From the NCBI RefSeq assembly GCF_006345805.1, contig NW_021833270.1:1-64000 (forward strand): a stretch of 64,000 nt of DNA, given 5' to 3'. The translations under genes were made by a program, and so were the position numbers. The notes under the pieces are model-generated. The model worked only from the letters and a program-made list of their open reading frames with translations. It was not told the DNA's origin and made no database searches. Each line of letters starts with the position of its first letter. The stretch's first letter is position 1. The stretch comes from Octopus sinensis. Its lineage: Eukaryota. Positions 1,248-62,993 of the stretch are shown piece by piece.

Positions 1248-1621
1248 TGTTTCTTTATTAGCCACACAGGGCTGCACACAGATAGAACAAATTACAAGGT
1301 AGAGCTTTTCTTTGAAGATTTAAAAAAAAAAAAAAAAAGGAAGGGGGGAGTTTCGATCAAAAGGGATCGTAAAAGGAGAGAAAGAGGACAAAAAAATGGG
1401 GGGTTAAAAAAAAGGGGGGGAGAGGAAAAAAAAAATGATCAATAGGGATCGTTATCACAGAAATGTCAATATGAAGTGTAAAGGGGGGAGGACAGGTGAG
1501 GTTTACCCGTGGAAAGAAAAGCTACGGAAAGACCACGGTAACCTCGGTCAATGGAGTACATGTTATATTCTTTTTTTTTTTTTTTTGCGAATAAGCAACT
1601 CTCTGTTTTCAATTTCTGGGT

Positions 1622-4600
1622 TCATAGGATCATGCTCAAGGTGGCTTCGTCATTCATACGTGCCATTCTTGCTACATTCACCCATCTTTTTTAAAACATT
1701 CGCTAGACAAAACTTGCCTCTCTACTCTCACTTTCCTTTTCAAGTGGTACTTGAAGAAGTTGATGAGAGATGACCAGAGAGGAAAGTGTTTGTCTCCAAT
1801 CCTTTCAGACGCGTCCACCAGATAAATTCTTTCGCCATAGCCACAAGGATGATGAAAATAGCTCTTCCTTCCCGTTTGAAGGAAGGAGGCGTGACAATAT
1901 TGACGATAGACTCAGCTGATAAACCGACTCGTCCCACACGTGACAGCAGTTGTTCGACATAAGCCCACAGGTCGGAAATTGTTGGACACTGCACGAGTGC
2001 GTGCAGAACGGTTTCGTCGCTCTGACCGCATCTCGGGCAGGTCGGCCCCGTGTTTCTCGAGCCGTGTCTGTAGAGCTTATCCCGAACGGGTAGCGCTTCT
2101 CGGTAGCACTGCCAGGCCAGGGATCTCTGGAAGTTGTCCATGGGCCCGGCCCGAAGTCGTCCTGAACAGGCGGGTCAGGTACTCCTCGTCGACGTCCAGG
2201 TTCGCCCCGAGCTCGTCGTCGTACCTCCCCTCCACTAAACCCTATAGAATGCTTTGGTTGTGTTGAAGTCACTCAAGGTCGACCCAGGACGGCAGAGTTG
2301 CTTGAGAGCAACGCGACACTCGCGTTGCCATTCGCTCTTCCTCGGCCTCTTTTTGATCCACGACTGCAGTTTGGTCATGGAGACGGCTGCGGGAAAGCGT
2401 GCCTCACAAACGGCGACCACACTGTTCACCGTCGTCTACATAGAGCCAGAGATGTCGCAGTCTCAACGCGTGTCTGCGCATCATCAACCACGGCATGCCC
2501 AGCCCTCCTTTTAGCGGGTGTTGACAGCAAATGGATCGCCTGACAATCGGGACGCATCCTTTCCACACAGAAGCGAAAGAGAATGCGTTGTAGTTTGGTG
2601 ATGGTAGGGTCGGGACAAGGTACGACGGTCAGGCGGTAGTAGATGACGGACGCGATGTACGTGTTCGCCACCTCCGCCCGACTTTTTAGGGACAGTTTCC
2701 TCTCGGCCCATTGCTGGGCGAGAGTGACCACCCTACTCGTTATCTCGTTCCAGTTCTTCTCCACTGGAGGTCCGGACCAAACCAGACCCCGAGCAACTCA
2801 ACGGGCCGTCGGTCCAGCATCCCACGACGGAGGCGCTGGTGGACGGCATGGGCTTGCTTCTCCAGGTGCCTAGTCGCAAGCCCACTGACTTTTCCCGGTT
2901 GATTTTCGCTCCTGTCACCGCTTCGTAGTATTTCAGTGTCTCGCCGACCTGCTCGATGTGCTCGTGGCTAGACACTATGACGGTGACGTCGTCCGCGTAT
3001 GCAGACACGCTCGTCCCGCATCCCAGTTCTCGCGGGATGCCTTTCAAGGTTGCCAGCCTCCGCAATAATGGCTCGAGAGTCAATACGTATAGAAGCGACG
3101 AGAGGGGGACCCTGACGGACCGACCGAACGTGCGATGTCGAAGGGTCTCGATAGATGTCCATTCACGCGAATTACCGAACGGATGCCTCTGTACAAAGCG
3201 GCTATCCAGCCGCGGAAGACGGGACCGAAGCCAGCCGCTCCGAGGACCGCCTCTAAGTATCGATGGTCCACCCTATCGAAAGCTTTCGATTGATCCAAAT
3301 TGATCAGCGCCCCACCCATGCCAGGTTCGTTAACTACCCTGTCTATGATGTAGCGCATCAGGTAGAGGTTGTCATGGATGGTCCGGCCTGGCACGGCGCA
3401 TGTTTGAGCCTTGTCGACCAGTTTCTCGATGACAAGCGCCAACCTCTTGGCTAGCACCTTGGCCAAAATTTTCAAGTCTGCATAAGCAGAGTGATGGGCC
3501 TAAAGTTATCTATTACATTTCCCTTGTTTAGATCTTCTTCAGCAGTGTTACGGCTCCTCGGCTCACAAAACCAGGAATGCTCCCGTTTTGCTGCCAGTTG
3601 CAGTACACCGCCGCCAAGAGATCTCCAAACAAGTCTGGCATACAATTGTAAAGCTCGTAGGGTAGACCATCCAAACCCTGTGATTTGTCCCTCGAGCATT
3701 CTGCCATCGCTTCCTGCACTTCCTCCGCCGTGATGGCACCTTCGCAGCACCCTGCCTTTCTTGTCGAGAGTCGTGGTAGGCTATGTAGGTAGGCACTGAA
3801 GTCCACCCTACGTTCTTGCCCTCCACTCGTTCCGAACAGTCGGGCAAAATGCTGCTGAAAGGCCTCACACATTTTACTTGGCTCGAGCAATTCGCGCCCC
3901 TGTTCATCTACCAGTGACCGAATGGTGGCTTTGTTGCCCTGTTGCGCCTCTGCCACCCGGGCCTCTCTCGCGGCTCCAACACCTTCGTTCCTTAGAGCAC
4001 GCATCCTGCTCTGACAGCACATCCTTCGTGTTTGGCGTTGAAGTGTTGGTCGAGGGCCAACCTCGCCGCCAAAACGTCGGATGCGATGCCGCTTCTAATT
4101 GCCTCTTCTAGCTTCTTAACTAGCTTACCCTCTACTCTATTTCTATCTATGGCTAGTGCTTTGCTGTACCTAATCGCTTCTGCTTTTACTGCTCTCTTGA
4201 GGGCAAACCACCATTTGTTGTTGATGATGGCTCCGTCAAAGCCCTCTTTACTAGTGTGCTAATCCGGTCTCTGAAAACCTGTCTCGATGGGAAAGACGCG
4301 TTTAGTTTCCAGTATCCGGGACCCTGCCTAAGTGTCTTACCTAAGTCTAGCGTACATGTCACAAGTTTGTGATCCGTGTAGCTGACTATGTGGAATTGTG
4401 GACATCCTATGCTATCTCTGTCTACTGTCCTACACAGTATCCTATCTAGATACGATCTCGACGACCCGATGCGGTTGTTCCATGTCCACGTTGGCGCATT
4501 CGGTGGTCTAGTCGGAACCTGTCAGACAGTTGAAAGCGTCTGAGCAGGTCTCTGAGGCATTTGCATCCCCGTCTATTCCTATCTCTACCCACGTAGTCTA

Positions 4601-5048
4601 CATGCGTGTCCAAGGTAGCATTCCAATCCCCCACTAAGAGTAAAGGACGAGACGTTCCCAAGAATACTTCTAGACGTTGAAAGAAATCCGCCGACCTGTT
4701 AAGGGCGGTGCGTAGACTGATACGAGTCGAAAAGCGCACACCATTGCTGCCGTCGACATCCAGGACGACCAGTCTACTACCTCCGGGTCTACGAATATTG
4801 TCCTTACTTGAGATCCAGACTCTTGTGAAAAAGTACCGCGGTGCCACTACCGCCATTCTCGGCAGACAGGGGGGAAAATAGATGTTGAACTGTTCGCCAA
4901 ACATGGTCTTTAGGGCCCGCGGATTGTGGAGTCTGGTCTCACTTATGGCTATGATTTCTAACTTATGTGACTTTATGTCATTTAAAAGGTACCCTTGTTT
5001 CCAAGGGGACCCCAAGCCACGCGCATTTACACAACCAATCTTGATCAT
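1622..5048 (-). pseudogene. ORF2 of the Tx1-like LINE (AP endonuclease + reverse transcriptase + zinc finger), frameshifted
   Basis: Consecutive minus-strand ORF pieces: MIKIGCVNARGL..ISETRL (APE), LLLVGDWNATLD, DKSQGLDGLPYELY, NFRPITLL, LDQSKAFDRVDH, SAYADDVT, CPRCGQSDETVLHALVQC. Stop inferred at 1622-1624 by comparison with the copy at 19.1 kb. Confidence 0.92.
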
Positions 5049-5290
5049 AGTCCTAATGAATTAGAATACAAGTGAAAGAACAGAGGGTTACTTATGCTCG
5101 AAAGTTTTTGCTTCTCTCTCCTTTGGTTTGTCCTCGAGAGATCCCAGTACAGTTTCTTTGTGAGATATTTTTGGCATTACCAACCGCGCTGGGGAAAATG
5201 CCTTTGAGTGTGTGGTGCAGACTTTTGGAGATGTGTAATATTTTGATGTGGTCTGGTGGTGTTGTGTATGGGTGATTGTTTGTTTTTATG

Positions 5291-10691: not shown

Positions 10692-11212
10692 ACTGGCAGA
10701 ATCGTTCAGCACGCCGGGCGAGATGCTTAGCGGTATTTCGTCTGCCGTTACGTTCTGAGTTCAAATTCCGCCGAGGCCGACTTTGCCTTTCATCCTTTCA
10801 GAGTCGATAAATAAAGTGCCAGTTTCGCATTGGGGTCGATATAATCGACTTAATACCTATATCTGTCCTTGTTTGTCCCCTCTATGTTTAGCCCCTTGTG
10901 GGCAGTAAAGAAATACCGAGGTCGACTTTGCCTTTCATCCTTTCGGGGTCGATAAATTAAGTACCAGTTACGCACTGGGGTCGATATAATCGACTTAATC
11001 CGTCTGTTTGTCCTTGTTTGTCTCCTCTTTGTTTAGCCCCATGTGGGTAGTAAAGAAATAAGTATTTTATCCGTTTTCACATTCTGAGTTCAAATTCCGC
11101 TGAGGTTGACTTTGTCTTTCCTACTTTCCGGAGTCGATAAAATAAGTACGGTTGATGTAATCGACTTACCCACTAAACTGAAATTTCTGGCCTTATGCCA
11201 AAATTTGAAATC
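10692..11212 (+). mobile_element. Cluster of SINE family B: full copy 10692-10915, headless tandem copy 10916-11060, diverged copy 11070-11212
   Basis: Repeated gtcgactttgcctttcatcctttcggggtcgataaa core; the first two copies end gtaaagaaata. Confidence 0.8.
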
Positions 11213-18806: not shown

Positions 18807-20419
18807 TGTTTCCTCATTAGCCACACAGGGCTGCACACAGACGAGACAGATTACAAAGTACAGCTTTTCTTTTTGGGGGAGAGAAAAAAAAGTGGGGAAG
18901 GTTTTCGATCAAAAGGGATCGTAAAAGGGAAAGAAAAAACCATCAATAGGGATCGTGTATCACAGAAATATCATGATGTAAAGTGTAAAGAGGGGAAACA
19001 GATAAGGTTTAACCATGGGAAGAAAAGACTAGGGAAAAAAACCACGGTAACCTCGGTCAATAATGTTATATGTTACCACATTTGTTTGCAAGTAGGTAAC
19101 CCTCTGTTTTCAATTTTCGGGTTCATAGGATTATGCTCAAGGTGGCTTCGTCATTCATACGTGCCATCCTTGCAACATTCACCCATCTTTTTTTGAAACA
19201 TTCGCTAGACAAAACTTGCCTCTCTACTCTCACTTTCCTTTTCAAGTGGTACTTGAAGAAGTTGATGAGAGATTAACCAGAGAGGAAAGTGTTTGTCTCC
19301 AATCCTTTCAGACGCGTCCACCAGATACATTCTTTCGCCATAGCCACAAGGATGATGAAAATAGCTCTTCCTTCCCGTTTGAAGGAAGGAAGCGTGACAA
19401 TATTGACGATAGACTCGGCTGATAAACCGTCTCATCCCACACGTGACAGCAGGTGTTCGACATAAGCCCACAGGTCGGAAATTGTTGGACACTGCACGAG
19501 TGCGTGCAGAATGGTATCGTCGCTCTGATCGCATCACAGGCAGGTCGGCCCCGTGTTTCTGGAGCCGTGTCTGTAGAGCTTACTCCGAACGGGTAGCGCT
19601 TCCCGATAGCACTGCCAGGTCAGGGATCTCTGGGAGTTGTCCATGGGCCCTGGCCCGAAAGTCGTCCTGAACAGGCGGGTCAGGTATTCCTCGCCGACGT
19701 CCAGGTTCGCCCCGAGCTCGTCGTCGTACCTCCCCTCCACTACTCCCCTATAGAATGCTTTGGTTATGTTGAAGTCACTCAAGGTCGACCCGGGACGGCA
19801 GAGTTCCTTGAGAGCAACGCGGTACTCGCGTTGCCATTCGCTCTTCCTCGGCCTCTTTTTGATCCACGACTGCAGTTCGGTCATGGAGACGAGTTGCGGG
19901 AATGCGTGCCTCACAAACGGCGACCACACCTGTTCACCGTCGTCTACGTAGAGCCTGAGATGTCGCAGTCTTAGCGCGTGTCTGCATGTCCTCAACCACG
20001 GCATGCCCGGTCCTCCTTTTAACGGGTGTTGACAGCAAATGGATCGCCTGACCATCGGGACGCATCCTTTCCACAAGAAGCGAACGAGAATGCGTTCTAG
20101 TTTGGTGATGGTAGGGTCAGGACAAGGCACGACAGTCAGGCGGTAGTAGATGACGGACGCTATGTACGAGTTCGCTACCTCCGCCCGACCTTTTAGGGAC
20201 AGCTTCCGCTCGGCCCATTGCCGCGCAAGAGTAGCCACCCTACTAGCTATCTCGTTCCAGTTTTTCTCCATTTGGAAGTCCGGACCAAACCAGATCCCGA
20301 GCAACTCGACCGGACCGTCGGTCCAGCGTTCCAAGACGGAGGTACTGGTGGACGGCATGGGCTTGCTTCTCCAGGTGCTGACTCGCAAGCCCACTGACTT
20401 TTCCCGGTTGATTTTCGCT
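18807..20419 (-). mobile_element. 5'-truncated second copy of the Tx1-like LINE (3' 1.6 kb)
   Basis: Collinear with 1248-2910. The ORFs at 20451-19534 and 19537-19205 encode the RT C-terminal region and zinc finger. Same 3' junction (agatagata|tgtttc) into a GATA/GACA tract. Confidence 0.92.
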
Positions 20420-20564
20420 TCTTTCAGTTTCCGTCTACCAAATCCACTCAAAAGGCTTTGGTCGGCACGAGGCTATAGTAGAAGACACTTGCCCACGGTG
20501 CCACGTAATGGGACTGAACCCGGAACTATGTGGTTCATAAGCAAGCTATTTACCACACAGCCAC
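20417..20564 (-). mobile_element. 5' half of SINE A fused directly upstream of the LINE copy
   Basis: gtggctgtgtggtaa...ggaaactgaaagaagc joins gaaaatcaaccggg of the LINE through a shared AGC. Confidence 0.85.
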
Positions 20565-21046: not shown

Positions 21047-21092
<46 letters not shown>

Positions 21093-21307
21093 AGCAATAA
21101 TAAATCTCTGAACGAGATATAAACAGTAACCGCTCGACAACGTAAGGTGTACTAGCCATCTGAATGTGGCTAGCCACTGGGGGTGGGGTGTTACTGATGC
21201 TTTTAGCTCCAGGCGATCAACGTCACCAGATGGACTTTAGACACAATCTCAGTGCCCTTGTGTTATTTGCAAAGGGAGGTCATCCTCCCTCGAAAACCTA
21301 AGTACTA

Positions 21308-21352
21308 CATACGGACTATAGTTTCAAGGTAATTGCCTCTTGTCAACGCATG
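21308..21352 (-). ncRNA. Minimal type I hammerhead ribozyme motif, U3-A8 core variant
   Basis: Minus strand: CAUGCG-UUGACAA-GAGG(CAAUUA)CCUU-GAAAC(UAUA)GUC^-CGUAUG. Stems I, II and III all pair; stem III and its loop form the palindrome ACUAUAGU. Confidence 0.75.
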
Positions 21353-21607
21353 GTAAGAACCGGTTTTCGATGAAGGAGACCCCTTGCAAATAATATTTAA
21401 CGTTTTTCACAGCAACCACTGTCACTGATTTAGAAAAACTGTGCTCGACAACGTAAGGAGTACGTTGTCGAGCGGTTACTGTTTATATCTCGTTCAGAGA
21501 TTTATTATTGCTTTCAGACAGTTTTTCTAAATCAGTGACAGTGGTTGCTGTGAAAAATGTTAAATATTATTTGCAAGGGGTCTCCTTCATCGAAAACCGG
21601 TGCTTAC

Positions 21608-21652
21608 CATGCGTTGACGAGAGGCAATTACCTTGAAACTATAGTCCGTATG
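21608..21652 (+). ncRNA. Minimal type I hammerhead ribozyme motif, U3.G8 core
   Basis: CAUGCG(21608-13) UUGACGA(21614-20) GAGG-CAAUUA-CCUU GAAAC(21635-39) UAUA GUC^(21644-46) CGUAUG(21647-52). Confidence 0.75.
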
Positions 21653-21818
21653 TAGTACTTAGGTTTTCGAGGGAGGATGACCTCCTTTGCAAATAACACA
21701 AGGGCACTGAGATTGTGTCTAAAGTCCATCTGGTGACGTTGATCGCCCGGGGCTAAAAGCATCAGTAACCCCCACTCCCAGTGGCTAGCCACATTCAGAT
21801 GGCTAGTACACCTTACGT

Positions 21819-21864
<46 letters not shown>

Positions 21865-21904
21865 TATTATATATTATATATATATGTATATATGCATATA
21901 GTCA

Positions 21905-22116
21905 TTTACCCTCTTATTTGTTTCAGTCATATGATTGCGGCCATACTGGAGTAGTACCGCCTTTAGTTGAACAAATTGACCCCAGAACTTATCGTTGTAA
22001 GTCTAGTACTTATTCTATCGGACGCATTTCCCCCGAACGCTAGTTATGTGGACGTAGACATACCAACATCTGTTGTCAAGCGATGATGAGTGGACAGACA
22101 CAGACACACAACACAC

Positions 22117-22162
<46 letters not shown>

Positions 22163-22300
22163 TCATTCTCCTTCGACCACATCGACTCACAAGCAATGAT
22201 GGGCGCGCGGCTACAGCAGAAGACACTTGCCCAAAGTTCCATGCAGTGGGACTGAACCGGAACCATGTGGTTGGTAAGCAAGCTATTTTCCATACAGCCA
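21905..22300 (-). mobile_element. SINE family A, diverged
   Basis: Reverse complement of the family A consensus. Confidence 0.8.
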
Positions 22301-22439
22301 CACAAATGTATATATATAATATATATATATAGATATATATATTATATATACATATTTTATTATAAAGACATATACATATGTATATACATACATATATACA
22401 TACAATGTTATATATATACATATACATACATATATGTAC

Positions 22440-37944: not shown

Positions 37945-38330
37945 TGTGGTGTGGTAAGTAGCTTGCTTACCAACCACATGGTTCCGGGTTCAGTCCCACT
38001 GCGAGGCACCTTGGGCAAGTGTCTTCTACTATAGCCTCAGGCCGACCAAAGCCTTGTGAGTGGATTTGGTAGACGGAAACTGAAAGAAGCCCGTCGTATG
38101 TGCGTGTGTGTGTTTGTGTGCCTGTGTTTGTGTGTCTGTGTTTGTCCCCTTAGCATTGCTTGACAATCGATGCTGGTGTATTTATGTCCCCGTTACTTAG
38201 CGGTTCAGCAAAAGAGACCGATAGAATAAGTACCGGGCTTACAAAAGAATAAGTCCCAGGGTCAAGTTGCTCAATTAAAGGCGGCGCTCCAGCATGGCCG
38301 CAGTCAAATGACTGAAACAAGTAAAAGAGT
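37945..38330 (+). mobile_element. SINE family A
   Basis: Near-consensus copy. Confidence 0.9.
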
Positions 38331-38380
38331 ATTACAGAATCAAAAGTTGCCACCTTTAGAATATTTTTATTACTGTACAG

Positions 38381-38839: not shown

Positions 38840-39247
38840 CTTACTTTTACTTTTACTTGTTTCAGTCATTTGACTGCGGCCATGCTGGAGCACCGCCTTT
38901 AGTCGAGCAACTCGACCCCGGGACTTATTCTTTGTAAGCCCAGTACTTATTTTATCAGTCTCTTTTGCCGAACCGCTAAATGACGGGGACATAAACACAC
39001 CAGCATCGGTTGTCAAGCAATGCTAGGAGGACAAACACAGACACACAAACACACATGCACACATATATATATATATATATATACGACGGGCTTCTTTCAG
39101 TTTCCGTCTACCAAATCCACTCACAAGGCTTTGGTCAGCCCAAGGCTATAGAAGAAGACACTTGGCCAAGGTGCCAGGCAGTGGGACTGAACCCAGAACC
39201 ATGTGGTTGGTAAGCAAGCTACTTACCACACAGCCACTCCTGCGCCT
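38840..39247 (-). mobile_element. SINE family A
   Basis: Near-consensus reverse copy. Confidence 0.9.
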
Positions 39248-39661: not shown

Positions 39662-40060
39662 AGTGGCGCAGGAGTGGCTGTGTGGTAAGTAGCTTGCTAA
39701 CCAACCACATGGTTCTGGGTTCAGTTCCACTGCGTGGCATCTTGGGCAAGTGTCTTCTGCTATAGCCCCGGGCCGACCAATGCCTTGTGAGTGGATTTGG
39801 TAGACGGAAACTGAAAGAAGCCTGTCGTATATATGTATATGTATATATAAGTGTGTGTGTCTGTGTTTGTCCCCCTAGCATCGCTTGACAACCGATGCTG
39901 GTGTGTTTACGTCCCCGTAACTTAGCGGTTCAGCAAAAGAGACCGATAGAATAAGTACTGGGCTTCCAATGAATAAGTCCTGGGGTCGATTTGCTTGACT
40001 AAAGGCAGTGCTCCAGCATGGCCGCAGTCAAATAACTGAAACAAGTAAAAGAGTAAAGAG
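39662..40060 (+). mobile_element. SINE family A
   Basis: Near-consensus copy. Confidence 0.9.
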
Positions 40061-40210
40061 TATATCATTATGCATAATCTCAAATACATATCCATCTATG
40101 TATTTCTCTATCTATCTATCTCTTTGTCTCTCTCTCCCTTTCTATGTGTTTCTCTGAATTTCTATCTCCCCATAGTCTTGCTAGCAATGTGTATGTCTGT
40201 CTATCTATCT

Positions 40211-43091: not shown

Positions 43092-43571
43092 CTCGGTCAC
43101 CAGTGTAGCGGGTATGATGCTTGGCCACTACTTCTGGTCTGATCTGAGGGTAGCCCTTAAAAGGACGGTTATCGCAATTAGATCCGATCCAAGAATAATC
43201 CTAAAAAGGACTGTTATCGTAATTAGATCGGGTCTGAGAGTAGTCCTAAAAAGGACTGTTATTGTAATTAGGTCGGATCTGAGAGTAGTCCTAAAAAGGA
43301 CTGTTATCGCATTCAGATCAGACTTGAATTAGCCCTGAAAAGGACTGTGGTCGTAATCAGCAAAACTGGTCAGACGAAAGCAGTAGTTGAAATGACGAGC
43401 AGACAAGAGGTGTAAGTTTATACAGCAATTTATTTCAGGCATGAAATAGCAGTACAAAGGTTCGAGGCGGCGTGAGTGGCGAGTGTGGCAGGCGAGAGGG
43501 ACACGATTTACATCGGTCGAGTGCCAAAAAGCCAACTGCCTTTACAGCGATTTATGATGTCTATTTATACA
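43092..43571 (-). mobile_element. Gypsy-type 5' LTR (43571-43104, TGT...ACA) followed by a primer-binding site
   Basis: Minus strand TGTATAAATA...AATAAA...GCTACA then c-TGGTGACCGAG; the first 8 nt match a tRNA-Trp 3' end. No internal region follows. Confidence 0.7.
43136..43360. repeat. 45-bp tandem repeat, ~5 copies, inside the LTR
   Basis: Translates as the 15-aa period SDLRVVLKRTVIVIR; no unique spacers. Confidence 0.9.
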
Positions 43572-45324: not shown

Positions 45325-45732
45325 TCTCTTTTTACTCTTTTACTTGTTTCAGTCATTTGACTGCGGTCATGCTGGAGCACTGCCTTTAATCGAGCAACTA
45401 GACCCAAGGACCTATTCTTTGTAAGCCCAGTACTTATTCTATCGGTCTCTTTTGCCGAACCGCTAAGTGACGAGGACATAAACACGCCAGCATAGGTTGT
45501 CAAGCAATGCTAGGGGGACAAACACAGACACACAAACATACACGCAAACATATATATATATACATATATACGACAGGCTTCTTTCAGTTTCTGTCTACCA
45601 AATCCACTCACAAGGCATTGGTCGGCCCGGGGCTATGGCAAAATACACTTGCCCAAGGTGCCACACAGTGGGACTGAACCCGGAACCATGTGGTTGGTTA
45701 GCAAGCTACTTACCACACAGCCACTCCTGCGC
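45325..45732 (-). mobile_element. SINE family A
   Basis: Near-consensus reverse copy. Confidence 0.9.
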
Positions 45733-53332: not shown

Positions 53333-53735
53333 GGCGCAGGAGTGGCTGTGTGGTAAGTAGCTATCTAACCAACCACATGGTTCTGGGTTCAGTCCCACTG
53401 CGTGGCATCTTGGGCAAGTGTCTTCTGCTATAGCCCCGGGCCGACCAATGCCTTGTGAGTGGATTTGGTAGACGGAAACTGAAAGAAGCCTGTCGTATAT
53501 ATATGTATGTATGTGTGTGTGTTTGTGTGTCTGTGTTTGTTCCCCTAGCATTGCTTGACAACCGATGCTAGTGTGTTTACGTCCGCGTCACTTAGCGGTT
53601 CGGCAAAAAGAGACCGATAAAATAAGTACTGGGCTTACAAAAAGAATAAGTCCCGGGGTCGAGTTGCTTGACTAAAAGGCGGTGCTCCAGCATGGCCGCA
53701 GTCAAATAACTGAAACAAGTAAAGGAGTAAAAGAG
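53333..53735 (+). mobile_element. SINE family A inserted in the satellite
   Basis: Near-consensus copy; the satellite resumes after it (gggtcacaagg). Confidence 0.9.
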
Positions 53736-54109
53736 TAAAGGGGTCACAAGGCAGCCTTGACATAGTAACCAAGTTTCTTTCAAATAATTACAGTAAGCCC
53801 AATAATTGAAATAAATCTTGATATCTTAATTTTCTCATTCATATTCTTGTTGCTTCAGAGGCCCAGTGGGTACGGGTGTTGAGGAGTAGTAATATAACAT
53901 AGAAGTGGAGGTTTCGAATCTCTTCTAGGAATTTCAAGAATTTTTTTTTTTTTAATGACTTCATTTTTATTTAAGCAACCAAGTTTCCATTAACAAAATG
54001 ATTGTGTGTGTGTGTGTGTAGAAGAGGTCGCAAGGCAGCCTTGACATAATAATCAAATCGCCTTCAAATCTTTATAGTAAACCTAATAATTGAAATAAAT
54101 TTCAATATT

Positions 54110-54319
54110 CTTTTATTCTTTTACTTGTTTCAGTCATTTGACTGCGGCCATGCTGGAGCACTGCTTTTAGTTGAGCAAATCGAACCCGGGACTTATTTTG
54201 TAAGCCCAGTACTTATTTTATCGGTCTCTTTTGCTGAACCGCTAAGTGACGGGGACGTAAACACACCAGCATCGGTTGTCAAGCAATGCTAGGGGGACAA
54301 ACACAGACATACAAACACG

Positions 54320-54395
<76 letters not shown>

Positions 54396-54552
54396 TACGA
54401 CAGGCTTCTTTCAGTTTCCGTCTACGAAATCCACTCACAAGGCATTGGTCGGCCCGGGGCTATAGCAGAAGACACTTGCCCAAGATGCCGCACAGTGGGA
54501 CTGAACCCGGAACCATGTGGTTGGTTAGCAAGCTACTTACCACACAGTCACT
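54110..54552 (-). mobile_element. SINE family A inserted in the satellite
   Basis: Near-consensus reverse copy. Confidence 0.9.
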
Positions 54553-54667: not shown

Positions 54668-57216
54668 CCCTTTCGTTACCATACTTCTAACCAAAATACA
54701 CCACTTATGTGTTTCAATTAATTTCTAACATAATCATGAATGTAGTCTGGTTTCATTAAACAACTCTAACATTTTTATTTATCAACATATTAACGTGATT
54801 TTTGGAAAAAAATTTAACAAAAGGTTCTCAACCAATTCTATTCCATAACTTTTGTCTCAAAGTGACTTTAATTACAGGTCAATATAGGTAAATTAAACAA
54901 AATATAAAATTGTTAAACTTTTTGTTCAAACATCGCTATAGAAAATGGTTTATTAGCTAATATTCAATTGGGTATACAACAAAATTTTACTATAGAAGAG
55001 TTGTGCACATTACTGGATTCATCAGGTAAATTTAAGTACACAAAAGACAGGTGTACCATAAAGATATAAATAAATTGAAAGACTGGAATTTATCTGTGAA
55101 GAAAACTAGAAAACAAAATACACACACACCATCAACTAGATTAAATAAGCTCTCCCACATGCATAGATATACAGAAATATACAATAATGATTTACAAAAG
55201 AAATTAATCAAAATTCATCACTCACCATGCAGGTAAATTAAAATTACACATAAAGAAAAATAAAAACAAAGTAAATTTGAAAATATTTATAAAATCAAAC
55301 AATATTCCTGTCATGAAAACCTGTAAAGCACCCTGTTCTACAGAATGCAACCTTGCAGAATGCACATTGGAGTGTTGTTTCAACAGCCCTTCCACTAGGA
55401 GCTTTCTCTTTTTTGATGAAGGCATTCGCGACACTGCTATTTGTGATACTTGATTTTTTTCTGATTTATGTAGATTGGTTGAATTCAGAAGGATATCCCT
55501 CTGGCAGGCTTTGTTTCTTCTCCCTACAGTTATTTTTTTCTTAGCAATAATCAGCTTTTAATTGTGTTGCTACACCTGCAGGGAACTGCAGATGGTCGCA
55601 TCGCTTTTGAGCCGGTCCCGATTTGGTATATAGTATAAACGCATTAGTAATACTCATATTTTCAATATACTAAACCAGGTATTGCCACCATTTATTTCCC
55701 GGTTTGCCAACTGGATAATAAGACATCATCTGATTCAGCAGATCTACACCATCCATGTAACTGTTATAATCGAGGTTCACAAATGTAGCCATGCACAGGT
55801 AGACAGAAAATTGACCTGACTTTTATCTCTGTATGTGGTTGCTAGCAAATTTCCTTTCTGCCGTTGAAATATTTCACCTTTTTTTTTTTAATTTGCCTTT
55901 TTTTTTATATCCAACGGCAGTCCTTTTCTACTAGCGATCACTGTTGCACATGTATGTGCTGCCACAGTATCTAAATTCTCCGCAAGTTTGACCGAACTGA
56001 AAAGTCCGTCAAAAAATAATATACAGCCCTGGTTATGGTATGAAAGTGATAAATTCCAGACCACATCGTACCCTAGGCCATGCTGACTAACATAATTGTC
56101 TCTTTTTCCACTATAAAATTCAAATCCCCAGCAGTAACCAGTATTTGATTCACAAATCTTCTAAACTTTGATCCCCCATTCTGTGGGCTTTCCTGGCATA
56201 TATTGTTGAAAACACACTCAGCCTTTATAGCCTAACATACCTTCATCGATAGATAAATATCTCCCTGGTTTATAAACAGTTTTATATGTGTTTTGAACAC
56301 AGTCAATGAGGGGTCTTATTTTAAATAATGGATCAAAGTCTGGTTCTTCATGTACTGGTGTACTGCTCATGTCTCTTACATGTAAATACTGAGTCAATTT
56401 CAAAAATCGTGTCCTCGACATCATATTTGAGACATATTTGTCTCTAAAGGGCTCATCACTACTCCAGTAATTTGTTATTCTGGGTAACTTTCTGATACCC
56501 ATAATAATATTTATGGCAAAATATGCCTGAATTTCATTTAAGCTTGTGGGAAACCACAAACTATCCTTTTTTTCGCTTTGTTTACTTTCAGCGTAACGGT
56601 TTGTTTCCACCGTAATTATTTCAAATAGGCTTATTGGAAAAATTAAAAAGAAATAGTCTAATGCTTTACTCTCCTGGGAAAGACTGTGACTTGGCACAGT
56701 TTCTTCAGAAAAATCACTGAAATAAACAGTTTTTAAATTTTCGCTTCATTCAGGTGCCAATTCATTTTCTTTATCGCTGTTGGAACTCTTGGATTCACTG
56801 CTTTCACTTTCGGAAAATGAAACATCAGATTCATTATCAAATACCACGTGCTTTTTTTTTCAGTCATAGAGTTAGATTTATCAAGGTCTTCAGTGGAAAA
56901 TCCTTCGAATTCTGACTCACTGCTTGACAAATCAATTTTTTGTCAGAATTATAAATTTTGAAAACACAACAGGAACAAATTTGGAAAAAAATCTCCCAAA
57001 ATTCACAGAATGAAAATTACAAATCGATCATTGCACAAAACTGTAGATGAACTGTTTACGAAGTATAATCAGGTGTTTTCATGAATGTACTAACGAGATT
57101 TGCTCTGATATTCTCATTTAAATATGAATAGGTGATTACAGCCGGTTTTGGGTGGCTTGGTCACATGAACCAAAATTTTTTTTCGGGTGGCTTTGGGCGG
57201 TTTGGTAACAAAAGGG
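54668..57216 (-). mobile_element. piggyBac transposon (2549 bp), decayed transposase at about 56930-55310
   Basis: TTAA at 54664-67 and 57217-20; 14-bp TIRs ccctttcgttacca / tggtaacaaaaggg (13/14 match). Protein fragments VETNRYA, YLSIDEGMLGYKG, YNSYMDGVD, and a Cys-rich C-terminus. Confidence 0.92.
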
Positions 57217-60519: not shown

Positions 60520-61420
60520 CCTTACCCAGTTTTCGTTGGCACTGTCAATGTCGGCACATTGAAAAATAGATTTAGCGAGATTGTTGAGCTGCTTGAATGG
60601 AGGCATGTTGATGTATGCTGCATCCAAGAGGCAAGGTGGAGAGGAGCTTCAGCCAGGTTCCTCACAGGCAAAGCACATAGGTATAAAATCTTCTTGGAAG
60701 GTAACAGTGATGGAGTAAGCAGTGTAAGCATACTTCTTGCATGGAATTGGGTGAATAAGGTCATATAGGTAGTCAGAGAGAGAGAGAGAGAGCAATAAAT
60801 TGATTAAGCTCAGGTTAATCTTGCAGAAAAGCATAGTGTCAGTTATCTTTGCCTACTCCCCACAAGTGGGCCTACCAAATGAACAGAAGGACCATTTTTA
60901 TGATATTCTCCAGCAGGCTACCTCTAAGATGAATGACAAGGATCTTATCTTCACTGCTGGGGACTTCAATGAGCATGTCAGATGGCAGCCCGGTATTTTC
61001 CATGGCGTACATGGAGACCATGGAATTGGCTCACAAAATAAAAAAAGAACAAGGCTACTGGAATTCTGTGATGCAAATAACCTATTGATCTGCAACAACA
61101 ATTTCAGGAAGCTGACCAGCCATCTGATAACCTATCAATCAGGTGGCTACGCTAACCAGGTCGATTACATTCTCACCAGGCAGTGGGATGCCTGGTTGCT
61201 CTTAAATACAAAGACCCCCCCCCCTCTGGTGAAGAATGTATCCCCCAGCATAGACTAGTCATTAGTTACTTTATACTTCTGGCCAGAAGGATGCCAAGAA
61301 GCAGACCAATCTGGAAAAGAAGGATTTGGAAGCTTTTTGGACCCTTCATATGGTCAGAGATTTAGGGACATTCTAATCGAGAAATTTGATGAGAGGTAGG
61401 AGGAATAACTGCTTAAAAGG
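60520..61420 (+). mobile_element. RTE LINE 5' coding part (AP endonuclease), decayed
   Basis: VDVCCIQEARWRG, SVIFAYSPQVGL, AGDFNEHV, RLLEFCDANNLLICNNNFRK, NQVDYILTR. Confidence 0.85.
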
Positions 61421-61904: not shown

Positions 61905-62307
61905 AGGCGCAGGAGCGGCTGTGTGGTAAGTAGCTTGCTTACCAACCACATGGTTTCGGGTTCAGTCCCACTGCGTGGCATCTTGGGCAAGTGTCTTCTG
62001 CTATAGTCCCGGGCCGACCAATGCCTTGTGAGAGGATTTAGTAGACGGAAACTGAAAGAAGCCTGTCGTATATATGTATATATATATATGTGTGTGTGTG
62101 TGTTTGTGTGTCTGTGTTTGTCACCCTAGCATTGCTTGACAACCGATGCTGGTGTGTTTACGTCCCCGTCACTTAGCGGTTTGGCAAAAGAGACCGATAG
62201 AATAAGTACTGGGCTTACAAAGAATAAGTCCCGGGGTCGATTTACTCGACTAAAGGCGGTGCTCCAGCATGGCCGCAGTCAATTGACTGAATCAAGTAAA
62301 AGAGTAA
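61905..62307 (+). mobile_element. SINE family A
   Basis: Near-consensus copy. Confidence 0.9.
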
Positions 62308-62993
62308 GTGCTATACTAATAAATTTCATTTCTATTACACGAGTTTGCATACTATTCAAAACAATAGTTGATATAGTTATTTCATAACTGTATATCTTCT
62401 GTAGGAGTCGTGAAATGTATTTTAGAATTTTCTCCACAAATATCGATAATAGGTTCTCACAAAACGTGATTCGGGTGCAAACGCTGTTAAGTTAAACACG
62501 AAGAAACCAAACTGAATAGGTTGGAAACAGTTGGTCACTTATATCTCAGACATTTTCTTACATCAAGTGCTTTCTAGCAATTTCTTTATTAGTATAACGG
62601 TAATTCATAATCACAACATCTCAAAATTCCTCTTAAATTTGCTCTGTAGTATTTATGTATATATTTATTGAATTGTGTTTGTATTTATTTTCTAATGGCC
62701 TTACAAAGAAAACCACTTACGATGGAAGCAAAGTTAATCGAAAACTACTTATTTCGCTCTCGCAAACTAATACATGTTTTACAGAAAACACACTTACATG
62801 TATGGTCTATAGAATAGATATATATCTGGTTGTGTGTATGTTTATATGTACGTATATATACACTTATGCATGTATATATTGTATGCGTGTATATGTATTT
62901 ATATTTACATTTATCTATAGATATATATGTATGTATATATCGGCACACAAACGCGCGCGTTCACACACACACACGCACGCAAAGACACACACA

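What the first reader, a model, noticed from the sequence alone, without database searches (positions are those of the whole stretch)
21092..21819. Retrozyme-like element: two circularly permuted copies of one 353-nt hammerhead RNA, integrated back to back
Seen: the right arm (21461-21813, plus strand) is a 353-nt unit whose first 6 nt (TACGTT) reappear at 21814-21819. The left arm (21442 to 21092, minus strand) is the same unit but starts 57 nt later in phase, runs across the unit's end-to-start junction, and stops 4 nt short of a full turn. Each arm therefore covers almost exactly one monomer in a different permutation, and both span an uncleaved hammerhead site. There is no ORF. Known: non-LTR retrozymes of metazoans are non-coding ~170-400-nt units with a type I hammerhead; they yield circular RNAs and are thought to be mobilised by Penelope-like elements. 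Inference: these arms were reverse-transcribed from a circular (or tandem multimeric) RNA. I am not aware of this family being described in octopus.
Basis: partly seen in the sequence, partly recalled or inferred. Interest (0 to 1): 0.93.

Follow-up and report, generated by a model that had tools for sequence, protein, structure and literature searches.

The report
Hammerhead-like retroelement inserted as inverted pair
A 728-bp non-coding insert in a (TA)n microsatellite consists of two head-to-head copies of one closed 353-nt unit carrying a hammerhead-like ribozyme motif; it looks like a retrozyme-type parasite of Penelope-like retrotransposons, a kind already known in other molluscs.

Summary
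The sequence observation is real. Window 21461-21813 (+) is a 353-nt unit (U), followed by 6 nt of a second turn. The minus strand of 21092-21442 is U58-353 joined to U1-53 (97.7% identical).

Each arm carries a type I hammerhead-like motif at the tip of a ~45-bp rod. Its architecture is the canonical metazoan one. It is sub-threshold in Rfam (17.1 bits against 34), and core position C3 is U in both copies. A general descriptor hits only here in 64 kb and never in 100 shuffles.

The layout matches published Penelope-like-element insertion architecture: a head-to-head inverted copy, partial tandems and a (TA)n target. There is no ORF and no RT or GIY-YIG gene nearby.

I could find no other copy of the unit, so family size, expression, circularity and catalysis are untested.

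Verdict: probably a retrozyme-like, PLE-mobilised element in an octopod genome. This is a new member of a known kind and of moderate interest. The two arms, each about one turn long, hint at a circular template.

The parts
21050..21091 (.). Left half of the (TA)n microsatellite target
   Evidence: Sequence read. The (TA)n run ends exactly where unit sequence begins (21091/21092).
21092..21144 (-). Left arm, outer (3') part: U1-53, the start of a second turn
   Evidence: 53/53 identity to 21461-21513 (pair I7).
21145..21442 (-). Left arm, main body: U58-353
   Evidence: blastn 97.3% over 298 nt, E=1.6e-142; global alignment.
21308..21352 (-). Left copy of the hammerhead-like motif, with core UUGACAA (U3-A8). 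Predicted cleavage is after C at 21314 on the minus strand.
   Evidence: Alignment. Found by the descriptor once position 8 is relaxed to R. No Rfam hit at E<=10.
21443..21460 (-). Third unit-junction fragment (U349-353 with 1 mismatch, plus U1-13) at the 5' end of the left arm. Comparable to the short 'tail' seen at PLE insertions.
   Evidence: Direct-repeat family D6; blastn 13/13; sequence read.
21443..21473 (.). Centre of symmetry: a perfect 13-bp palindrome around the 5-nt AGGAG, marking the head-to-head (5'-5') junction of the arms
   Evidence: stem of 13-14 pairs, loop of 5.
21461..21813 (+). Right arm: one complete 353-nt unit (U1-353), 43.9% G+C, no ORF
21567..21696 (+). Self-complementary rod (U107-138 pairs with U202-236) with the hammerhead-like motif at its tip
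   Evidence: Internal inverted similarity; minimum-free-energy folds.
21608..21652 (+). Right copy of the type I hammerhead-like motif. Helix I is CAUGCG/CGUAUG (6 bp). The core is UUGACGA (U3.G8). Helix II is GAGG/CCUU (4 bp) with loop CAAUUA, followed by GAAA. Helix III is AC/GU with loop UAUA, so ACUAUAGU is palindromic. GUC ends at 21646.
   Evidence: Rfam RF00163 full-length match 1-45/45, 17.1 bits, E=0.065. It is the only descriptor hit in the window, with 0 hits in 100 shuffles.
21814..21819 (+). U1-6 repeated, the start of a second turn of the right arm
   Evidence: pair I10 runs to 21819.
21820..21893 (.). Right half of the (TA)n microsatellite target
   Evidence: Tandem Repeats Finder row 21819-21893, period 2.

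Best explanation
This is one insertion of a small non-coding, non-autonomous retroelement of the metazoan non-LTR retrozyme type: a 353-nt unit with a type I hammerhead-like motif. It was placed in a (TA)n microsatellite by the machinery of a Penelope-like element (PLE).

Proposed course of events:
1. A source locus is transcribed.
2. Unit-length RNA is released and closed into a circle, or stays multimeric if the U3 core cleaves poorly.
3. A PLE endonuclease nicks both strands of a (TA)n tract.
4. Each 3' end primes reverse transcription on the closed template.
5. Each cDNA runs about one turn: U6 back to U1 on the right, U53 back to U58 on the left.
6. The two 5' ends are joined head to head, leaving an 18-nt junction 'tail'.

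Shown here: the closed 353-nt cycle, both arms crossing the ribozyme site and the unit junction, the head-to-head orientation, the (TA)n target, the absence of coding capacity, and the strongly self-paired fold.

Inferred: the RNA intermediate, its circularity, the identity of the reverse transcriptase, and any self-cleavage.

The copy now looks like a young fossil. The arms differ by 1.7% in substitutions, and half of those are at CpG sites. If transcribed across, the locus would form a ~350-bp hairpin.
For: 1. Closure of the unit. The right arm shows U1->U353->U1-6. The left arm shows U58->U353->U1-53. The centre holds a third U353->U1 junction. The outermost-left 53 nt pair with the innermost-right 53 nt, which a simple inverted duplication cannot produce.

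2. Arm length. Each arm's main body is one turn, +6 nt on the right and -4 nt on the left. By chance this is about 13/353 x 9/353, roughly 1e-3 (thresholds chosen post hoc, from the coordinates).

3. Hammerhead-like motif.
- Rfam Hammerhead_1 matches end to end at 17.1 bits and is the only ribozyme family hit.
- A general type I descriptor gives 1 hit in 128 kb of both strands against 0 in 100 dinucleotide shuffles. With position 8 relaxed it gives 2 hits against a shuffle mean of 0.01.
- Helix I of 6 bp, helix II of 4 bp and helix III of 2 bp with a palindromic tetraloop are exactly the 'canonical metazoan' architecture in PMC4209133.
- The U3-A8 core of the left copy is a natural covariant reported there for Cercyon PLEs.

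4. Fold. The plus-strand circle folds at -116.3 kcal/mol, z = -5.2, 67% paired, with the motif at the tip of a rod. Retrozyme circles are described the same way (PMC7229834).

5. Insertion architecture. Partial tandems, an inverted copy joined at the 5' end, a short tail and a (TA)n target are the published PLE hallmarks (PMC8557442). PMC4209133 also reports paired hammerheads 100-700 bp apart on opposite strands.

6. No attached gene. The only RT active-site motif in the window belongs to a LINE, and there is no GIY-YIG-like motif in any frame.

7. Host. The flanking LINE's best named relative is from the octopod Argonauta hians. Octopus genomes carry Penelope-like elements (PMC13282606, PMC8967140).
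Against: - The hammerhead is far below Rfam's gathering score (17.1 against 34). It is not found at all when more than about 1 kb is searched.
- Both copies have U at the near-invariant C3. The pattern of CpG differences between the arms suggests the common ancestor was U3.G8, which is probably a poor catalyst.
- The left copy gives no Rfam hit.
- No other copy of the unit was found in the 64-kb window, JGI metagenomes, IMG/VR, prokaryote genomes or the protein collection via its pseudo-ORF. These collections hardly contain octopod DNA, however. Multi-copy status, tandem arrays, conservation of the motif and expression are therefore all untested.
- The ends of the arms do not coincide with the predicted cleavage site, so nothing ties the ribozyme to the ends of this copy.
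- The 44-nt gap (U14-57) has no microhomology and no clear cause.
Confidence: 0.6

Rival explanations
1. Retrotransposed, but from a linear multimeric or terminally redundant transcript rather than a circle. An RNA starting near U349/U1 and running a little more than one unit was copied from both target nicks. The left arm later lost U14-57.
For: Both arms share nearly the same 5' phase at the centre, U1 and U349, as expected for a defined 5' end of a linear RNA. The U3 core may cleave poorly, which would leave multimers. PLE transcripts are terminally redundant through their pLTRs (PMC8557442).
Against: It does not explain why the right arm ends within 6 nt of its start phase. Nor does it explain why the left arm's internal breakpoint (U58) lies within 4 nt of its outer end (U53). 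The joint chance is about 1e-3. The 44-nt 'deletion' has no flanking microhomology.
Confidence: 0.2
2. DNA-level origin with no RNA step. Monomer circles (eccDNA) or fragments of a 353-bp satellite were captured by end joining at a break in the fragile (TA)n tract. Alternatively, this is a small remnant of a rearranged satellite array.
For: Unit-length pieces opened at different positions (U1 and U54-57), with small gains and losses at the joins (+6, -4, and an 18-nt filler), look like end-joining products. (TA)n tracts are abundant in this window. No poly(A), target-site duplication or RT gene is present.
Against: No satellite array of this unit exists in the 64 kb. A head-to-head pair in (TA)n is specifically the PLE signature. 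The unit has a hammerhead-like motif and an RNA-like compact fold, which a plain satellite does not need. That said, hammerhead satellites are themselves what retrozymes are.
Confidence: 0.12
3. Assembly artefact: a palindromic chimera from long-read library or assembly errors over a tandem repeat.
For: Inverted, tandem PLE-type structures are known to trouble assemblies (PMC8557442). The centre is a perfect short palindrome.
Against: The arms are offset in phase rather than mirror images. They differ by 6 substitutions, 3 of them at CpG sites, plus 2 indels, which looks like real decay. Both outer ends abut the same microsatellite cleanly.
Confidence: 0.04
4. The hammerhead resemblance is irrelevant, and the locus is an unrelated foldback/MITE-like DNA element or a hairpin-RNA (siRNA/miRNA-like) gene.
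For: Long inverted arms give strong hairpin scores. Rfam miRNA-precursor models hit the centre at E=2.6e-18. (TA)n/TA targets are also used by some DNA transposons.
Against: The termini are not inverted repeats of each other: the left end is the reverse complement of U53 and the right end is U6. The miRNA hits are to plant families, far below their gathering scores, and reflect any long hairpin. The descriptor statistics argue against a chance hammerhead.
Confidence: 0.04

Closest known systems
Metazoan non-LTR retrozymes (Cervera & de la Pena 2020, PMC7229834), e.g. the 350-390-bp units of Mytilus galloprovincialis and the 330/353-bp axolotl/newt 'satellite 2' units
   Same: A non-coding unit of ~170-400 nt (here 353). 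G+C below 50% (here 43.9%). One type I hammerhead-type motif per unit, with helix I of 6 bp, helix II of 4 bp and a 2-bp helix III capped by a palindromic tetraloop, implying a dimer mode of action. A highly self-paired predicted circle. Head-to-tail unit junctions. A host genome that also carries PLEs.
   Different: Only about one turn per arm rather than tandem arrays of 2 to more than 60 units. Arranged as an inverted pair. Core C3 is U in both copies and the Rfam score is half the threshold. No evidence yet of a multi-copy family, of expression or of circles.
Penelope-like element insertions and their pLTR hammerheads (Arkhipova 2006; Cervera & de la Pena 2014, PMC4209133; Craig et al. 2021, PMC8557442)
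   Same: A partial tandem forming a pseudo-LTR-like redundancy. An inverted copy abutting the 5' end. A short extra 'tail' at a junction. A (TA)n microsatellite target. Paired hammerheads a few hundred bp apart on opposite strands. The U3-A8 core variant is documented in Cercyon PLEs.
   Different: No RT/GIY-YIG ORF. The whole element is 353 nt and closes on itself, so it is not a fragment of a 3-4-kb PLE. The tail is 18 nt rather than 30-40. PLE 'min-HHRs' usually have a long helix II and almost no helix III, whereas this motif has the canonical retrozyme-type architecture.
Hammerhead ribozyme type I, Rfam RF00163 (Schistosoma, newt and cricket type)
   Same: Full-length alignment to the 45-position model. 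Shares UGACGA, GAAAC, GUC and a CAAxUA loop 2.
   Different: 17.1 bits against a gathering score of 34. U at C3. G.U at the base of helix II (10.1-11.1). The left copy also has A8.

Membership tests
Hammerhead ribozyme type I (Rfam RF00163) | Score at or above the curated gathering threshold (34 bits) | tested here: not met
   No hit at gathering in the window. The right copy scores 17.1 bits, E=0.065, in a 101-nt search. The left copy gives no hit at E<=10.
Hammerhead ribozyme type I (Rfam RF00163) | Three helices around the core in type I order, with cleavage triplet UH and the A15.1-U16.1 pair | tested here: met
   Helix I 6 bp, helix II 4 bp, helix III 2 bp, GUC at 21644-21646. It is the sole descriptor hit in the window, against 0 in 100 shuffles.
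Hammerhead ribozyme type I (Rfam RF00163) | Conserved core C3-U4-G5-A6-N7-G8-A9 and G12-A13-A14 | tested here: not met
   U4-A9 and GAA are present, but position 3 is U in both copies. The right copy is U3.G8. The left copy is U3-A8, a natural covariant per PMC4209133.
Hammerhead ribozyme type I (Rfam RF00163) | Self-cleavage | not testable with these tools
   Needs in vitro transcription of monomer and dimer constructs.
Metazoan non-LTR retrozyme | Small non-coding unit (~170-400 nt), G+C below 50%, without LTR, PBS or PPT | tested here: met
   353 nt, 43.9% G+C, longest stop-free stretch 66 aa.
Metazoan non-LTR retrozyme | Units in head-to-tail tandem copies in the genome | tested here: inconclusive
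   Three head-to-tail junctions are present, but each arm holds only 1.02-1.05 units.
Metazoan non-LTR retrozyme | Multi-copy dispersed family | not testable with these tools
   Nothing was found in the collections available. These hardly contain octopod DNA: an abundant LINE returned only 13 protein hits.
Metazoan non-LTR retrozyme | Compact, highly self-paired predicted circular RNA | tested here: met
   Circular minimum free energy -116.3 kcal/mol, z=-5.2 against 200 dinucleotide shuffles, 67% paired. The linear fold gives z=-5.45.
Metazoan non-LTR retrozyme | Expressed as linear and circular monomer RNA | not testable with these tools
   No transcriptome data are available here.
Metazoan non-LTR retrozyme | Co-occurrence with autonomous PLEs in the host genome | tested here: inconclusive
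   No PLE in the 64-kb window. The literature reports Penelope-like families in Octopus genomes. The host species of the window is only inferred to be an octopod.
PLE-type insertion architecture | Partial tandem plus an inverted copy joined at the 5' end, a short tail, and microsatellite (TA)n target preference | tested here: met
   The anatomy was compared with the description in PMC8557442. The tail is 18 nt rather than 30-40.
PLE proper (autonomous element or its pLTR) | RT plus GIY-YIG ORF between the repeats | tested here: not met
   No ORF lies between or beside the arms. There is no GIY-YIG-like motif in the window, and the only RT motif belongs to a LINE. The unit closes on itself at 353 nt.
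Foldback / MITE DNA transposon | Terminal inverted repeats reaching the element ends, and a target-site duplication | tested here: not met
   The left end is the reverse complement of U53 and the right end is U6, so the outer 47 nt on the left pair with the inner part of the right arm. A target-site duplication cannot be scored inside (TA)n.

The most novel reading that the evidence does not exclude
The two arms are direct genomic footprints of target-primed reverse transcription on a closed 353-nt RNA circle. Each cDNA, primed from one strand of a (TA)n break, went round once and stopped at its own starting point (+6 and -4 nt). If dispersed copies genome-wide show the same 'one turn, any phase' rule, this would be the first sequence-level evidence that circles, not multimers, are the retrotransposition template of animal retrozymes. 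It would also show that PLE-type double priming acts on them. The family would further be one whose hammerhead core runs on U3 (U3-A8 or U3.G8) in a cephalopod.
Probability: 0.2. Interest if true: 0.65.

Novelty: new member of a known kind. Interest (0 to 1): 0.4.

Why it matters
Animal retrozymes are thought to move through circular RNAs copied by Penelope-like reverse transcriptases. That step has only been proposed (PMC7229834) or supported by phylogeny (bioRxiv 10.64898/2026.07.22.740005).

A clean, young, single insertion could serve as a worked example of the integration chemistry. Here both arms are one turn long, cross both the ribozyme site and the unit junction, and sit head to head in a (TA)n target. 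That gives a simple rule (arm length of one unit, arbitrary phase) that can be tested genome-wide.

It would also extend hammerhead-bearing retrozyme-like elements to cephalopods, where I found no report in the searchable literature.

On its own, as one locus with a sub-threshold, C3-mutant motif, it is an ordinary transposable-element annotation.

Tried and rejected
- Rfam at gathering on the whole window gave nothing.
- Rfam at E<=10 on 1.1 kb gave only spurious long-hairpin hits, such as plant miRNA precursors. The hammerhead surfaced only in a 101-nt search.
- Searching for other copies failed everywhere: blastn against the window, two exact k-mers in JGI metagenomes, a degenerate hammerhead pattern in IMG/VR, and a 24-mer in prokaryote genomes.
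- The 'pseudo-ORF trick', searching the unit's longest stop-free translation against 5.8 billion proteins, found no candidates.
- Exact look-ups of two window ORFs to find the source assembly were not on record.
- I ran no further search on the plus-strand pseudo-ORF. An abundant LINE returned only 13 hits, so octopod DNA is barely represented.
I replaced it with inspection of all ORFs of at least 70 aa within about 5 kb either side and regex checks for GIY-YIG and YxDD motifs.
- I tested whether the unit is an old dimer of ~155-nt half-units, suggested by repeat family D6. The best internal direct alignment scores only 11, so I rejected this.
- I considered a snap-back (self-primed) origin for the central palindrome. 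I rejected it because the 5-nt loop and the sequence beyond the 13-bp stem do not fit self-templated extension (reasoned).
- The bacterial promoter/terminator scan is not applicable to a eukaryote. It only re-found the central hairpin.

Full report
**1. Observation**

- The right arm, 21461-21813 (+), is a 353-nt unit (U). Positions 21814-21819 repeat U1-6.
- On the minus strand, 21442->21145 is U58-353 (298 aligned nt, 97.3%, E=1.6e-142).
- It runs without a break into 21144->21092, which is U1-53 (53/53).
- A global alignment shows 6 substitutions and two 1-nt indels between the arms. Three substitutions are at CpG sites where one arm keeps CpG and the other has TpG or CpA.
- There is no ORF. 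The longest stop-free stretch in any frame of a tetramer is 66 aa.

One point was missed. The 18 nt between the arms (21443-21460) read on the minus strand as CTCCT-TACGTTGTCGAGC. That is U349-353 (one mismatch) plus U1-13 (family D6). With 21461-21473 they form a perfect 13-bp palindrome around AGGAG.

The left arm is therefore U349..U13, a 44-nt gap (U14-57), then U58..U353..U53. The two arms meet 5' end to 5' end at nearly the same phase.

The unit closes on itself. The U353->U1 junction occurs three times, and U53->U58 continuity is seen in the right arm. The outermost-left 53 nt pair with the innermost-right 53 nt, so this is not a mirror-image duplication.

**2. The hammerhead claim**

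- Rfam finds nothing at gathering in the window.
- It finds nothing hammerhead-like at E<=10 in 1.1 kb. The only hits there are spurious long-hairpin matches to plant miRNA models.
- In a 101-nt search, Hammerhead_1 (RF00163) aligns end to end (1-45/45) at 21608-21652 (+). The score is 17.1 bits against a gathering score of 34, with E=0.065.
- The left copy gives no hit.

By hand the motif reads as follows. Helix I is CAUGCG/CGUAUG. The core is UUGACGA. Helix II is GAGG/CCUU with loop CAAUUA, followed by GAAA. Helix III is AC/GU with loop UAUA, then GUC^.

A general type I descriptor of my own finds exactly this site in both strands of the 64 kb. It requires Y3-UGANGA, helix I of at least 5 bp, helix II of at least 3 bp, GAA, A15.1-U16.1, helix III of at least 1 bp, and H17. 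It finds nothing in 100 dinucleotide-preserving shuffles. With position 8 relaxed to R it finds both arms, against a shuffle mean of 0.01.

The 6/4/2-bp helices with a palindromic tetraloop are what Cervera & de la Pena call the canonical metazoan type I hammerhead, which works as a dimer (PMC4209133; PMC7229834). ACUAUAGU is an 8-nt palindrome, so two copies can build a long helix III.

Against this, the near-invariant C3 is U in both copies. The right copy is U3.G8. The left copy is U3-A8, a covariation reported as natural in Cercyon PLE hammerheads. Because the G/A difference sits in a CpG, like two other arm differences, the common ancestor was more likely U3.G8.

I therefore call it hammerhead-like. 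The motif is statistically not a chance occurrence. It fails two formal membership criteria, and its activity is doubtful.

**3. Fold**

- The plus-strand unit folds at -122.1 kcal/mol as a linear molecule (z=-5.45).
- As a circle it folds at -116.3 kcal/mol (z=-5.2 against 200 shuffles, 67% paired).
- U107-138 pairs with U202-236 to form a ~45-bp rod with the motif at its tip.
- The minus strand is less stable (z=-4.0) and carries no ribozyme-like motif.
- G+C is 43.9%.

**4. Surroundings**

The insert lies inside a (TA)n tract, with 21050-21091 on the left and 21820-21893 on the right. A target-site duplication cannot be scored there.

- Upstream are a LINE 3' fragment (19005-20426, 91% identical to 1499-2917) and its ~148-nt tail (20417-20564), followed by mixed microsatellites.
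- Downstream is a copy (21897-22301) of a ~400-bp SINE-like family with at least 10 copies in the window.
- No RT/GIY-YIG gene is nearby. The ORFs within about 5 kb are microsatellite translations or the LINE tail. Pfam on the ten longest ORFs gives only a LINE endonuclease and a piggyBac fragment.
- A six-frame motif check finds one RT YADD (the LINE) and no GIY-YIG-like motif.
- The LINE ORF's best named relative is from the octopod Argonauta hians (59% identity).

**5. Related sequences**

I could not obtain any.

- The window has no second locus.
- Exact-word scans of JGI metagenomes, IMG/VR and prokaryote genomes were empty.
- A protein search with the unit's longest pseudo-ORF was empty.
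- Window ORFs are not on record in the contig index.
- An abundant LINE returned only 13 hits, so these resources barely hold octopod DNA.

Absence here says nothing about copy number in the host genome.

**6. Mechanism**

The layout matches published descriptions of PLE insertions: partial tandems, an inverted copy abutting the 5' end, a short tail at a junction, and a (TA)n target bias (PMC8557442). PMC4209133 also notes paired hammerheads 100-700 bp apart on opposite strands.

Retrozymes are proposed to be copied from circular RNA by PLE enzymes (PMC7229834). A 2026 preprint argues that they are non-autonomous PLE derivatives. Octopus genomes carry Penelope-like families.

I therefore favour a single PLE-mediated insertion, primed from both strands of a (TA)n break on a closed 353-nt template.

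The strongest hint for a circle rather than a multimer is length. The right arm ends 6 nt past its start phase. The left arm's main body ends 4 nt short of its start phase. The joint chance is about 1e-3, though the thresholds were chosen after seeing the data.

The shared central phase (U1 and U349) and the unexplained 44-nt gap keep a linear, terminally redundant template alive as a rival. A DNA-level capture of satellite or eccDNA monomers cannot be excluded either.

The arm differences, which include CpG-type decay, argue against an assembly artefact.

For a rough age, assume the arms were identical at birth. Then 6/349 substitutions is about 0.9% per arm. On the O. vulgaris scale in PMC13282606 (JC 0.065 for about 18 My) this is of the order of 2-3 My.

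**7. Verdict**

This is most likely a retrozyme-like, PLE-mobilised, hammerhead-type element in an octopod genome, and so a new member of a known kind. The ribozyme is sub-threshold and carries a C3U change. The 'family' is a single locus so far, and no RNA evidence exists.

Interest is moderate. The arms of about one turn each are the feature worth following genome-wide.

Noticed in passing
window 1400-5100 (-) and 19005-20426: A LINE with an APE-type endonuclease (4446-5048, Pfam Exo_endo_phos) and an RT YADD motif near 2999. Its 3' part recurs at 19005-20426 (91% identity to 1499-2917). The 305-aa ORF at 19534-20451 (-) is the post-RT tail; its relatives carry PF13966 and the best named one is from Argonauta hians.
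   Followed up: partly
window 21897-22301 and at least 10 other sites (e.g. 37949-38331, 38850-39237, 39674-40115, 45331-45724, 53342-53737, 54105-54551, 61917-62315): A ~400-bp SINE-like family at 73-79% mutual identity. Its last ~148 nt match the LINE 3' end at 20417-20564, suggesting a LINE-SINE tail partnership. Copies carry microsatellite tails.
   Followed up: partly
window 56218-56697 (-): A fragment of a piggyBac-type transposase (Pfam DDE_Tnp_1_7, E=4e-33).
   Followed up: no
window 60800-61258 (+): An ORF with a weak endonuclease-reverse-transcriptase match (Exo_endo_phos_2, E=5e-5, below the cut-off), probably a second LINE fragment.
   Followed up: no
window 10771-11060 and 43141-43357: Two non-microsatellite tandem repeats: 145 bp x 2.0 (88% matches) and 45 bp x 4.8 (80% matches).
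   Followed up: no
window 21361-21599: In E-value mode, Rfam gives strong-looking hits of plant miRNA precursor models (MIR8622 E=2.6e-18, MIR821 E=8e-17) across the palindrome centre. These are generic long-hairpin artefacts, far below the gathering scores.
   Followed up: yes
proteins P0001-P0005: The closest relatives of the window's LINE ORF sit on short contigs in metagenome or MAG records, one labelled Herbaspirillum sp. This is probably cephalopod DNA contaminating those records.
   Followed up: no
window 21132-21152, 21288-21308, 21443-21463: A weak 21-nt similarity (71%) between the unit-junction region and the stretch just 3' of the predicted cleavage site, spaced ~155 nt apart. The best internal direct alignment scores only 11, so there is no sound evidence that the unit is an old dimer.
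   Followed up: yes
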